A stretch of DNA of 64,000 nt from contig NC_087454.1 in the NCBI RefSeq assembly GCF_036321535.1, forward strand, positions 20,026,001 through 20,090,000, read 5' to 3'. Shown piece by piece: positions 47,633 to 56,790 of this stretch (position 1 is its first letter; each line of letters starts with the position of its first letter). The notes beneath the pieces were generated by a model that worked only from the letters and a program-made list of their open reading frames with translations, ran no database searches and was not told where the DNA came from. The position numbers were made by a program, and so were the translations under genes. The DNA comes from Camelus dromedarius (taxonomy: Eukaryota).

Positions 47633-49116
47633 AACAAACCCACCTGAGCACCCCCAGATGCCTCCCCCACCGCAGGCGGGTGGTCAGGGCCGCCCTGAGT
47701 TTCACCCAGTAAAGACCATGATCTCACACATTCTGTGTCTTGGGCTTCTCCATCCCTCTCAAACCCCGGCTCCACATGGCCATCATCAAAGTCTAAGTGA
47801 CTTACCCTCCCGCCCGCTCTGGGGTCAGATAGGGATTCATTGGGTGAAGAAGGGTGTTGAGGGACCCACGCTCCTCTGAAGGCCAGAAAAGAGAATTTGT
47901 CTATGGGCCATTGACAAGTAGGACTAATCATGCCTGAAACTGCATTTCTCAGGCGAATGGGACTTAGCCTCCTGAGCGTGGGAGAGGGAGGTACGTTGAG
48001 TCCCAGAATGGTGGTGGTGGGAGGGGGCTCTAGGCAGGAGTGCTGGGAAGCTCCCTTCTTGGGCCAATCCAGGCCCAACTTGGTAGAAGGGAGAGTAAGA
48101 GCCAGTCGGGAGAACCCGGAGAGGGGCACATGGGGGCATCTGAAGATGGAGAAGAAATACACAAGACTCATAAGAAGCAGCTAATGGTGAGGCAGAGAGG
48201 GATTTATTGGGGTCTCTTGAAGAACACTGGGATTATTGGGGTCTGGAATCACTTATCAGAGGCCATCCAGGGAGGGGCAGTGTGTTCCCAGGTGACAGTG
48301 GCCTGATGGAGAGGTGACAGGAGTCGCGCAGCGCTGGAGCCCTCCTCCTCTTCTTGGTCTCTGTCTCCTCCTCCAGGCCTCTCACTGACCCTCTCATCTC
48401 TTCAGCCATTGTCCCGGCTCCATTACTCACATTTGCCCTAATAATAGATGGTACTGCCCATGGCCACAGAGAGAAAGCGGAAGGCATAGAATCCATCCCG
48501 AAAGAGGAGGGCTGTGCCGGCCACTAGTAGAGGGGGTCCTGCATGTGGGCAAGGGGTGGGGAGCGTTAAGTAAAGGATGCCTGGGGAAGAGGCGTGCACA
48601 GGGTCAGGGAGGGACAGAGGGCAGCGGGCCTCAGGAAGGTCTCTCAACTTCTAGAGAGAGTGGAGCCTCCAGACAAGGAGCACCAGACAACTTCTCAGCA
48701 ACTCATCTTTCTCCATCAGCAGCAGAGTCCCATTCCCTGTTCCAACACCCAGGCCCAGTACCTCCATCTGGCATGTGCTGACTCTGGCATCATGGTCTCA
48801 GGTGTCCCAGATGTTCAGCTCAGCCTGGTGGGCACTGAGGAAGCAGGAAGAGGCAAGAGGGGCCAGATGGCCCCTGAACTCTGGGGTCCCATTTCTCACC
48901 TTCTTCCCTGGGGCCACTTTGTCCTGGTACCATGTGACAGACCCAGTGGCCATTCTCCCTTGGCTGGCATTGAAGGAACAGGGTAGGGAGGCAGGGGGGC
49001 CCTCCTGGGTGTGGATCTCAGGGAGCTGGGACACCCAAAGAACACAGGATCCTGGGGGCAGAGAGAAGACCCAGAGAAACAACCCCCTAGCTACTCCAAA
49101 GATAAAAGACAAGAGT

Positions 49117-49253
49117 GGGAGAGGGTATAGTTCAGTGGTAAAGTGAGTGCTCAGTATGCACGAGGTCCTGGGTTCAGTCCCCAGTACCTCCATTTAAAAA
49201 AATAAACAATAAGCCTAATTACCTCCCTGCTAAAACAAAACAAACAAAACTCC
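49117..49253 (+). mobile_element. Young tRNA-derived SINE in NCR3 intron 1, with a 12-bp TSD
   Basis: gggagagggtatagttcagtggta…gggttcagtcccc…A-tail; aaaagacaagag at 49104-49115 and 49254-49265. Confidence 0.9.
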
Positions 49254-49779
49254 AAAAGACAAGAGAGCTTGCAGTAGAATACCCCAGCTGTACCCCTACC
49301 CATTAAGGGCCCAGAGGGACAAGTCCTTAGATGCCTCATTAAAACCCTTTTCTCTTTACCAACATAATTTCTTAACATTGCTTATTAAATAGTTTTTCAA
49401 ATTCTTTCCCATACCAACTCTCACCCTCTCCCATCATTCTCCAGTTACATTCACTAGTAACATTTTGCTGAAACTTAACCTGTCACAGTGAAATTGAAGC
49501 TCATTAATGAACGTGGCTGCCTAGTTAAATAATATCATTAATTACATTATTCCAAGTATTATTTTAGTACTAACAGCATTCAGTAGTAGACCACTTTTGC
49601 TAATTTTTGTTGTTATTGTTGTTGTTAAAGAGTATTAACTAATTAAATCTCCAGGTGAAGACATGGCTATAATTGATTGAGATCACTGTTTAACTCATTT
49701 AAATTGATGAATTAAACCAATTACTAAAATCCTTGATTAAATTCATTAGTTAATGAAATTTACCAGTCATGCTTCTATG

Positions 49780-49950
49780 TCAGTGATTCTCAAACTTGAG
49801 GGCACACTGGCACCACCTGGAGTGATTGTTAAGACAGATTCCAAGTCCCCACTCCCAGCCTTCTTTATTCACTGGGTCTGGAGTGGGTCTTGGGAATTTG
49901 CCCCAGATCCCAGCTGATGCTGAAGCTGAGGGTCTGGAGTTCACACTGCA
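49780..49950. mobile_element. MER5A-like DNA transposon relic
   Basis: cagtgattctcaaactt…gggtctggagtggg…gagttcacactg. Confidence 0.65.
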
Positions 49951-51837
49951 TTTAGTTAATGGATCTGTCTGATAATTAAAATCAGGTTCATTAAGAAATA
50001 GATTTAATTAGGTCTCCCAAACTGCTAATTTGATCTAGACCCTAGATAATAGGTTTTGTTTAATAGGCTTATTAAACTCATCAAATTAAAACTGACCCCT
50101 TTAAAAAAAAATTGACCCCATCCTTCAAGCCCTTCCTTCCTTTTTACTGGTTCTTTAAATTTGATCTCTTCAGGAAGGTGGCTGAGAAGAAAAGAATTCT
50201 GGGATGGAAGCTGGGGAATGACCCTCCGAGCAGGTGACATGAAGGGAACTGTGAACTGGGGCATCTATATCCAGCCTCCTCCCTCCTCCCAGCCCCACAC
50301 CCCTCAGGGTCCTAGAAGAAAGCCTTGTCACCTGGATGGACTGTGATAAAGACGAGCAACAGAATCCGGGCCATGTCAGAGGGCGTTCCTGTTGACAAGG
50401 AGAACCTGAGCAGTGAGGTCTGGGTGGAGGAAGAATGACCCACTACTTGTGACCAGGCCTTGGGTCACTAGATGGGGGTGGGGGGCTTCCTATAACACAC
50501 AGGACTCACACATCACTTACCAAGGACTCAACTGCCTAGGACATCGGGCATCAAATGCATGCCTCCCTGAGGAAAGAGGATGTTGCAGACAGCGGTATCT
50601 GGGTCGCTAGGAAGTGCGGGCAGCATGTGGGCAGGTTTGAGGGAGAGGGTGGAGCTTAGATGGTTGGTAAGTCAGGATGGGTTGGTGGACAAGTGAGACC
50701 AGGAAGTGGTTCCCCCACCTTCTGAGGTTCAAGAAGATCAGCCCCTTACCCAGAATAAGCCTCCAGGAGCCTTTCTGGGCCCAGAGCTAAACTACTTCCC
50801 CTCCCCTTGGCTCAACAGTGCCCAAGCCAACCCCATCCATTCCCTTCTGGCCCTCCCCCAGGGCTGCTCTAGAAATCCTATAAATAAGAGGATTAGCTGA
50901 CGCCATCCATCAGCTGGCGGCTGCAGGGGGTTGCTAGGGACTTTGTCTGGAAGCTGCATTTACATAGCAGTCATCCGGTTTCACTTAGACTGTGTGGACT
51001 TGGGTGGACTGGCAGAGAGAGTGCAGCTGATGGAGAAGTTTGGACTCATTCATATTCTGGTCTCCACTAAAGGGATACACCTCTCACAGAGGTCTGCTTT
51101 ACCTAGTGCATTCTGCACAGATTTATCACCCACTGGTAAATTCACTCATTTTGATTATTTTATTCATTATTTAACTCACATTATTGAGCAATTACAAATG
51201 TAGTTTCTAGTTTCTAGAAAATGTAGTTTTCTGTAGTAAAATATATTTTTAAAGACAAAAATGAAAAACATATTGCAATACACAGAACTCCAAGGTTATG
51301 GAGGATTAGTACAAGAGTACACCACAAACTCTTGGATACATATTACCCACCTACATGAGATAACACAGCACAAAGAAAAGAAGGATGACGTGTAATGTGC
51401 TGGGGGAAACCTGCCCAGCCCTCACTGCACATTTGCTCTCTGGTTCCTTTCACATTAATACATACTCTTTCTGTCCGTGTTTCCAGCTCTCTTTCATAAT
51501 ACAATTGTAGACTGTGCAGTTCCCACCCTTCACTGCAGTGATCTGGAGCCTTTTCCCCCCACATCACAACAACCTTTATTGCCCCAAGAGAAACTCTATT
51601 CTTCTTGCTCCATCTGCCCTCCTGTAGGACCAGAGAAAAGGGGCCCTGGAGCCCAGAACATCAACATGCAACATAAAGGGGCTCAACAGGGAAGTAAGCC
51701 CCACTGCAGCCGGGTTCCGGGTGCCTGCCTCGCTCATCCTGGGTGAGAACCGGGTCCCCTGTGGAATGCTGGGAGAGCATGGACTGCGAGCCTTTTTTTT
51801 TTTTTTTTTTTTTTTTGAAGGAGCATTGATTTTATGG

Positions 51838-56189: not shown

Positions 56190-56790
56190 GAAGGAACCCT
56201 ACTTCAAAAAGNNNNNNNNNNNNNNNNNNNNNNNNNNNNNNNNNNNNNNNNNNNNNNNNNNNNNNNNNNNNNNNNNNNNNNNNNNNNNNNNNNNNNNNNN
56301 NNNNNNNNNNNNNNNNNNNNNNNNNNNNNNNNNNNNNNNNNNNNNNNNNNNNNNNNNNAACGCCATTTGCAGCAACATGGATGTCCCTGGAGAATGTCAT
56401 TCTAAGTGAAGTAAGCCAGAAAGAGAAAGAAAAATACCATATGAGATCACTCATATGTGGAATATATATATTAAAAAAAGAACATAAATACAAAACAGAA
56501 ACAGACTCATAGACATAGAATACAAACTTGTGGTTGCCAAGGGGGAGGGGGTGGGAAAGGACAGGCTGGGAGTTTGAAATTTGTAGATACTGACAAGTAT
56601 ATGTAGAATAGATAAACAAGATTATACTGTATAGCACAGGGAAATATATACACAATCTTGTGGTAGCTCACAGCAAAAAGAATGTGATAATGAATATATG
56701 TATGTTCATGTATAACTGAAAAATTGTGCTCTACACTGGAAATTGAAACAATATTGTAAACTGACTATAACTCAATTAAAAAAAAAACTG
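56190..56790 (+). mobile_element. L1 3' end (artiodactyl/camelid type), partly masked
   Basis: gccatttgcagcaacatggatg…attctaagtgaagtaagccagaaagagaaag…, ending in tcaatt(a)n. Confidence 0.85.

What the first reader, a model, noticed from the sequence alone, without database searches (positions are those of the whole stretch)
48256..50374. NCR3/NKp30 is a unitary pseudogene with three independent inactivating lesions
Seen in sequence: the four-exon structure is fully preserved (43/345/108 nt plus tail). However, codon 99 is TGA at 48798-48800 (context GACACC-TGA-GACCAT; the human equivalent is Arg, so probably CGA>TGA CpG decay), upstream of the second Ig cysteine C108. The exon-2 donor reads AAAG|ATGAGT instead of GT, and codon 163 is TAG at 48438-48440 (YY*GK versus YYQGK). 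Established: NKp30 is an activating NK receptor for B7-H6/BAG6, functional in human and a pseudogene in Mus musculus. Inference: this camelid lineage lost NKp30 independently of mouse, within an otherwise intact MHC III block. I have some recollection that camelid NCR3 has already been annotated as non-functional, so novelty must be checked.
Basis: partly seen in the sequence, partly recalled or inferred. Interest (0 to 1): 0.8.

Follow-up and report, generated by a model that had tools for sequence, protein, structure and literature searches.

The report
Dead NKp30 gene in camels
The dromedary copy of NCR3, the gene for the natural-killer-cell activating receptor NKp30, is broken by two stop codons and a ruined splice site, but this loss in camels and alpaca was already published in 2019.

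Summary
NCR3 lies on the minus strand at 48256-50374, with exons of 43, 345 and 108 nt plus a tail. It carries TGA at codon 99, an AT in place of the GT donor of exon 2, and TAG at codon 163.

The window is identical to a dromedary assembly. Two other Camelus assemblies carry all three lesions. Alpaca shares TGA99 and the dead donor but still has CAG at codon 163. Two lesions therefore predate the split of Old and New World camelids, and TAG163 is specific to Camelus.

Sheep, sperm whale, hippo and dog have intact genes with the same exon lengths, CGA or CAA at codon 99 and GT donors. Camelid-clade dN/dS is 0.97 against 0.39 elsewhere.

The core claim is not new. Futas et al. 2019 (PMC6614441) amplified this same 3,040-bp locus and reported the same two premature stops in all dromedary and Bactrian sequences, plus stops in alpaca. 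A 2026 review repeats it.

Three small things go beyond the passages of that paper I read. These are the donor lesion, the order of the lesions and the neutral-rate estimate.

A read pile-up could not be run. B7-H6 co-loss was not tested. Interest is low.

The parts
50332..50374 (-). NCR3 exon 1 (43 nt): ATG and signal peptide, followed by a normal GT donor
   Evidence: Same length and position as in sheep, sperm whale, hippo and dog.
48707..49051 (-). NCR3 exon 2 (345 nt): V-type Ig domain
   Evidence: This exon up to the stop is 82% identical to peccary and bat NCR3 and matches PDB 3NOI at E 2e-35.
48798..48800 (-). Lesion 1: in-frame TGA at codon 99 (ancestral CGA, a CpG C>T change). It lies before the second Ig cysteine (C108) and is shared by Camelus and alpaca.
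48705..48706 (-). Lesion 2: the exon-2 splice donor reads AT instead of GT (G>A at +1). It is shared by Camelus and alpaca.
   Evidence: All four outgroups read AAAG/GAAG|GTGAGG.
48431..48538 (-). NCR3 exon 3 (108 nt): stalk and transmembrane segment. The Arg143 codon is still present.
48438..48440 (-). Lesion 3: in-frame TAG at codon 163 (ancestral CAG). It is present in all three Camelus assemblies and absent in alpaca (CAG).
48256..48302 (-). NCR3 exon 4 coding part (CHCHLGTHCPSLDGL tail, like that of sheep P0012). The normal stop TGA is at 48258-48256.
47870..50909 (-). Span of the 3,040-bp PCR amplicon of Futas et al. 2019. Both published primers match exactly.

Best explanation
This is the single-copy orthologue of NCR3 (NKp30) in the dromedary MHC class III region, and it is a fixed, old unitary pseudogene. 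A CpG transition changed Arg99 (CGA) to TGA inside the Ig domain. A G>A change destroyed the +1 base of the exon-2 splice donor. Both happened before Old World camels and New World camelids split. A third hit, CAG>TAG at codon 163, arose later on the Camelus branch, before dromedary and two-humped camels split. Any product would stop after 98 residues. It would lack the second cysteine of the Ig disulphide, the stalk, the transmembrane arginine that couples NKp30 to its signalling chains in human (established knowledge), and the tail, so no receptor can be made. Since inactivation the coding sequence has drifted at the neutral rate. Shown here: the lesions, their distribution across assemblies, and the rate shift. 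Inferred: absence of the protein and the date of the loss.
For: Anatomy and lesions. Identity of the window with a dromedary assembly (100% over 21.8 kb). Same three lesions in two more Camelus assemblies. Alpaca shares TGA99 and the AT donor but has CAG163. Outgroups are intact with identical exon lengths, and give the ancestral states. All three sites are present in 14 DNA runs of two organisms. Relaxed constraint by parsimony: the camelid stem has 33 non-synonymous and 8 synonymous changes against 67 and 55 in non-camelids, Fisher p = 0.005. Relaxed constraint by my own ML branch model: camelid clade omega 0.97 against 0.39 background, LRT p = 0.015, not different from 1 (p = 0.92). Of 58 positions at least 95% conserved in 45 non-camelid NCR3 proteins, 9 are changed in camelids, including Tyr106 of the Ig Y-x-C motif. 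No intact camelid NCR3 appears among the protein hits; the only camelid entry is a 'LOW QUALITY PROTEIN' model that dodges the stop and reads into intron 2. Published: all sequences from 9 dromedaries, and all Bactrian sequences, carry the same two premature stops, and alpaca has stops in the Ig domain (PMC6614441).
Against: No read pile-up was obtained, so per-base read support rests on sampled k-mers and on independent assemblies. I did not search a whole camelid genome for a second copy; that point rests on the protein search and on the published BLAST of CamDro2. RNA-seq runs hold most words of the locus, introns included, so the locus may still be transcribed; this does not restore a reading frame. 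With the stem alone as foreground the ML test is not significant (omega 0.82, p = 0.10). The background omega of 0.39 leaves modest power.
Confidence: 0.95

Rival explanations
1. The lesions are assembly or sequencing errors, or rare alleles of the sequenced animal, and camels have a working NCR3.
For: No read pile-up could be made.
Against: Three independent Camelus assemblies have identical lesions and an alpaca assembly has two of them. Fourteen DNA runs of two organisms hold all sampled words across the three sites. PCR re-sequencing in 9 dromedaries and in Bactrian camels found the same two stops in all sequences.
Confidence: 0.01
2. This copy is dead, but an intact NCR3 paralogue elsewhere in the camelid genome supplies NKp30.
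For: No genome-wide DNA search was possible with these tools.
Against: The search of 5.8 billion proteins returned no intact camelid NCR3, only the broken C. ferus model P0053. The best hit, P0001, comes from a contig that is 76-79% identical to camel, alpaca, sheep, sperm whale, hippo and dog alike, so it is not a camelid. Futas et al. [quoted passage not shown] NCR3 sits between LST1 and AIF1 in every mammal fetched here where the fetched stretch reached both flanks; elsewhere only the LST1 side was seen.
Confidence: 0.02
3. The locus survives as an expressed non-coding or truncated-product gene. Examples would be an intron-retaining transcript or a 98-residue secreted fragment with some residual regulatory role.
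For: Camel RNA-seq runs hold 0.66-0.97 of the sampled words of the locus, including intron words.
Against: Word presence in Logan contigs cannot tell unspliced RNA from genomic DNA carry-over. Coding drift is neutral (omega 0.97). A 98-residue fragment lacks the second Ig cysteine and strands F and G, and conserved core residues are already mutated.
Confidence: 0.05

Closest known systems
Camelid NCR3 pseudogene as described by Futas et al. 2019 (Front Genet 10:620, PMC6614441)
   Same: It is the same locus. Both published primers match the window at 50909 and 47870 and give the published 3,040-bp amplicon. [quoted passage not shown]
   Different: In the passages and the supplement I read, the paper does not mention the exon-2 donor G>A. 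It does not state which stop is shared with alpaca and which is Camelus-only, and it gives no rate analysis. Those three points are added here.
Mouse Ncr3 pseudogene (Hollyoake, Campbell and Aguado 2005, cited in PMC6514059)
   Same: An MHC class III NCR3 orthologue disabled in place by premature stops while the neighbouring genes stay intact (for the citation).
   Different: It is an independent event in a different order. [quoted passage not shown] The camelid loss predates the Camelus/alpaca split and is shared by the alpaca and all three Camelus assemblies examined.
Functional NKp30 of human, ruminants, whales, hippo and dog (PDB 3NOI; 3PV6 contains an NKp30 chain)
   Same: Same synteny where seen, the same four-exon layout (43/345/108 nt plus tail), 75-82% amino-acid identity over the first 83 residues of exon 2, and a retained transmembrane Arg codon.
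   Different: The camelid copy has two stops and a dead donor. It has lost residues that are near-invariant elsewhere: I50T, E65K, R76H, R84C, D88A, Y106S, V107T, V110M and V127M.

Membership tests
NCR3 / NKp30 orthologue | Position in MHC class III between LST1 and AIF1, on the same strand as LTB | tested here: met
   AIF1, NCR3, LST1, LTB, TNF and LTA lie in this order in the camel loci. The LST1 side, and in hippo LTB, TNF and LTA as well, is the same in the sheep, sperm whale, dog and hippo loci.
NCR3 / NKp30 orthologue | Four coding exons of 43, 345 and 108 nt plus a tail, with conserved phases | tested here: met
   lengths are identical in dromedary, alpaca, sheep, sperm whale, hippo and dog.
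NCR3 / NKp30 orthologue | Sequence closest to NCR3 proteins and to solved NKp30 structures | tested here: met
   53 hits down to E 4.8e-38, and every hit that carries an informative name is NCR3; 3NOI, 6YJP, 9FWW and 3PV6 at about 1e-35.
NCR3 / NKp30 orthologue | Complete V-set Ig domain with both cysteines in one open frame | tested here: not met
   the C39 and C108 codons exist but are separated by TGA99. The fragment before the stop scores 17.3 bits against Pfam V-set (cut-off 26), whereas sheep NCR3 scores 31.7. This is the failure expected of a pseudogene of the family.
NCR3 / NKp30 orthologue | Arginine in the transmembrane segment, needed for signalling-chain pairing | tested here: met
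   LLFRDGFY retains the Arg143 codon, although the next residue has become Asp (A144D).
Unitary pseudogene | Disabling mutations in the orthologous, non-duplicated locus | tested here: met
   two in-frame stops and a +1 donor mutation. Single-copy status is only partly tested (and the published BLAST).
Unitary pseudogene | Lesions fixed in the species or lineage, not polymorphic | tested here: met
   and PMC6614441: three Camelus assemblies, an alpaca assembly, 14 DNA runs and published amplicons.
Unitary pseudogene | Relaxed purifying selection after inactivation | tested here: met
   omega 0.97 in camelids against 0.39 in the background (p = 0.015), not different from 1; the N:S ratio is 33:8 on the stem.
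Unitary pseudogene | No functional protein or spliced mRNA | not testable with these tools
RNA runs hold words of the locus, but splicing could not be examined.

The most novel reading that the evidence does not exclude
Its dedicated ligand gene NCR3LG1 (B7-H6) has decayed in parallel. Camelids would then be a second natural mammalian knockout of the whole NKp30/B7-H6 axis, in a large animal, and much older than the mouse loss. No paper in the searched library links NCR3LG1 with camelids, and I could not test it.
Probability: 0.3. Interest if true: 0.3.

Novelty: already known. Interest (0 to 1): 0.12.

Why it matters
NKp30 is one of the three natural cytotoxicity receptors of NK cells. In human it recognises B7-H6 and BAG6 on stressed or tumour cells (established knowledge). 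Its absence from all camelids is relevant to camel immunology, for example NK responses to MERS-CoV or camelpox, and to the design of camelid NK reagents. This has been in the literature since 2019 and is repeated in a 2026 review. The increments here are small. They are a third, splice-site lesion; the order of events (TGA99 and the donor first, TAG163 later and only in Camelus); and evidence that the sequence has drifted neutrally across the camelid lineage. The only open question of some interest is whether the ligand B7-H6 was lost together with the receptor.

Tried and rejected
1. Read pile-up. The cap is one call, so there are no per-base read counts and no splice joints. I substituted a k-mer search of a 401-base stretch covering all three lesions.

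2. Second intact copy. The best protein hit, P0001 (intact Ig domain, with a camel-like 'SQLPEIHTQEG'), was checked as a possible camelid paralogue. Its contig L010 is 76-79% identical to camel, alpaca, sheep, sperm whale, hippo and dog alike, so it belongs to another mammal. Rejected.

3. B7-H6 co-loss. No tool gave me a B7-H6 sequence to use as a query, and typing one from memory was not acceptable. The literature search and the scan's own notes gave nothing. Not tested.

4. Selenocysteine or read-through of TGA99. Rejected on anatomy: there is a second stop and a dead donor, conserved core residues are lost, and omega is about 1.

5. AT-AC (U12-type) intron as a rescue of the AT donor. Rejected: the donor ATGAGT lacks the ATATCC consensus, the intron ends in AG, and all outgroups have an ordinary GT-AG intron here.

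6. Earlier notes of this scan held nothing near this place or about NCR3.

Full report
**Observation**

- Exon 1 is 50374-50332 (43 nt), with an ATG and a GT donor.
- Exon 2 is 49051-48707 (345 nt). Its acceptor is AG, but the intron after it begins AT (48706-48705), reading AAAG|ATGAGT.
- Exon 3 is 48538-48431 (108 nt, AG/GT).
- Exon 4 starts at 48302, and the normal stop TGA is at 48258-48256.
- Codon 99 is TGA at 48800-48798, nine codons before the Cys108 codon.
- Codon 163 is TAG at 48440-48438 (YY*GK).

**What the gene is**

- The uninterrupted part of exon 2 finds only NCR3 proteins among those hits that carry an informative name. There are 53 hits, with E down to 4.8e-38 and 75-82% identity to peccary, bat, whale, ruminant and human NCR3.
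- It matches the solved human NKp30 structures 3NOI, 6YJP, 9FWW and 3PV6 at about 1e-35.
- In camel assemblies the locus lies between AIF1 and LST1, followed by LTB, TNF and LTA. This is the MHC class III arrangement.
- In the same assembly those neighbours have ordinary protein models with the expected Pfam domains.

**Whose genome**

The window is 100% identical over 21.8 kb to GCA_036321535.1. Its LTB protein is named Camelus dromedarius by NCBI. It is 99.75-99.8% identical to GCA_048773025.1 and to GCA_009834535.1. Both of those carry the model that NCBI names Camelus ferus NCR3.

**Are the lesions real?**

- Both other Camelus assemblies carry all three lesions. Within the exons they differ from the window at a single site, 48805 (D97G in L001).
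- The only camelid NCR3 protein in the 5.8-billion-protein collection is a 'LOW QUALITY PROTEIN' of C. ferus. Its model starts in intron 1, changes frame, skips the stretch that holds TGA99 and reads through the dead donor into intron 2 (MEKDELLRSCLVLLVWRLHSL).
- As a substitute I searched a 401-base stretch spanning all three sites. Fourteen DNA runs of two organisms, from at least five studies, hold 37 of 37 sampled 31-mers.

Taken together with the published re-sequencing described below, assembly error is excluded for practical purposes.

**Order of the lesions**

The alpaca assembly GCA_048564905.1 (L003, fetched through its LTB gene) is 97.7% identical across the locus.

- It shares TGA99 and the AT donor, and also the loss of the Ig-core tyrosine (VSTC in place of VYVC).
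- It has CAG (Gln) at codon 163.

Sheep, sperm whale, hippo and dog NCR3 loci have the same 43/345/108 exon lengths and are intact. The one difference in layout is a one-base gap in the sperm whale's exon 4.

- All their donors are GT.
- Codon 99 is CGA in the three cetartiodactyls and CAA in dog.
- Codon 163 is CAG or CAA.

The order of events follows from this:

- TGA99 and the donor G>A arose before Camelini and Lamini split.
- CAG>TAG at codon 163 arose later, on the Camelus branch, before the dromedary and the two-humped camels split.

**Relaxed constraint**

- By parsimony on a fixed tree, the camelid stem carries 33 non-synonymous and 8 synonymous changes. All non-camelid branches together carry 67 and 55 (Fisher p = 0.005).
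- After the split, the Camelus and alpaca branches add 8 non-synonymous changes and 1 synonymous.
- I wrote a maximum-likelihood codon branch model (F3x4 codon frequencies, stop positions masked). It gives omega 0.97 for the camelid clade against 0.39 for the rest (LRT p = 0.015). This is indistinguishable from 1 (p = 0.92).
- With the stem alone as foreground, omega is 0.82 and the test is not significant (p = 0.10).
- Of 58 positions that are at least 95% conserved in 45 non-camelid NCR3 proteins, nine are changed in both dromedary and alpaca. They include Tyr106 of the Y-x-C motif.
- A rough inference from these values is that the gene was already dead for most of the camelid stem branch.

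**Mechanism**

- Any translation ends after 98 residues, before strands F and G and the second cysteine of the Ig fold.
- Even without that stop, intron 2 cannot be removed at its normal donor, and reading into it gives a stop after 21 codons.
- In Camelus the transmembrane exon carries a further stop.
- That no NKp30 receptor is made is an inference from this anatomy. It was not measured.

**Comparison with what is known**

- Futas et al. [quoted passage not shown] - Their supplement lists a 3,040-bp NCR3 amplicon sequenced in 9 dromedaries. Both primers match the window exactly, at 50909 and 47870, which are 3,040 bp apart. It is therefore this very locus.
- A 2026 review repeats the statement.
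- The mouse pseudogene is cited in PMC6514059.
- The central claim is therefore already known.
- Three points go beyond the passages I read: the donor lesion ('splice' occurs only once in the paper, in another sense), the order of the lesions, and the rate analysis.

**Rivals**

- A second intact copy is unlikely. The one suspicious hit, P0001, is not a camelid sequence.
- Residual transcription is possible. Camel RNA-seq runs hold 0.66-0.97 of the words of the locus, introns included. I could not tell unspliced RNA from DNA carry-over.

**Not done**

- B7-H6 (NCR3LG1) co-loss was not tested, because no query sequence was available from any tool and there is no literature on it in the searched library.
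- There are no per-base read counts.

**Verdict**

This is a real, correctly read unitary pseudogene, lost independently of the mouse loss, but it is already published. Interest is low.

Noticed in passing
window 49110-49193 (minus strand), intron 1 of NCR3: An open frame (MEVLGTEPRTSCILSTHFTTELYPLP...) runs from 49193 into exon 2. By eye it looks like a tRNA-derived SINE-like sequence. NCBI's C. ferus 'LOW QUALITY' NCR3 model P0053 starts at this ATG, and the 243-residue dromedary model in L005 starts at the same coordinate. Annotation pipelines therefore build artificial proteins from the pseudogene.
   Followed up: partly
window 48805 (minus-strand codon 97): This is the only exonic difference among the three Camelus assemblies. 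The window and L002 read GAC (Asp), while L001 reads GGC (Gly). It is a non-synonymous variant inside the dead gene. Futas et al. report 2 predicted variants per camel species, but I did not check whether this is one of them.
   Followed up: partly
window 48200-50400; runs X15-X18, X39, X40: Camel RNA-seq runs labelled 'reproductive system metagenome' hold 0.66-0.97 of the sampled 31-mers of the NCR3 locus, including words from introns 1 and 2. This means either unspliced transcription of the pseudogene or genomic DNA in the libraries.
   Followed up: partly
L003 2635-4824 (alpaca) and L005 3824-4836 (dromedary): Both assemblies carry called protein-coding genes of 210 and 243 residues over the NCR3 pseudogene, with no Pfam hit on record. 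The public annotations therefore still present the locus as coding.
   Followed up: no
The tool itself says this is no evidence of anything. It is noted only so that later calls avoid the stretch.
   Followed up: no
window 607-63951, nine runs of N (147-286 bases each): There are masked or gap stretches, for example at 56212-56358 between NCR3 and AIF1. None touches NCR3.
   Followed up: no
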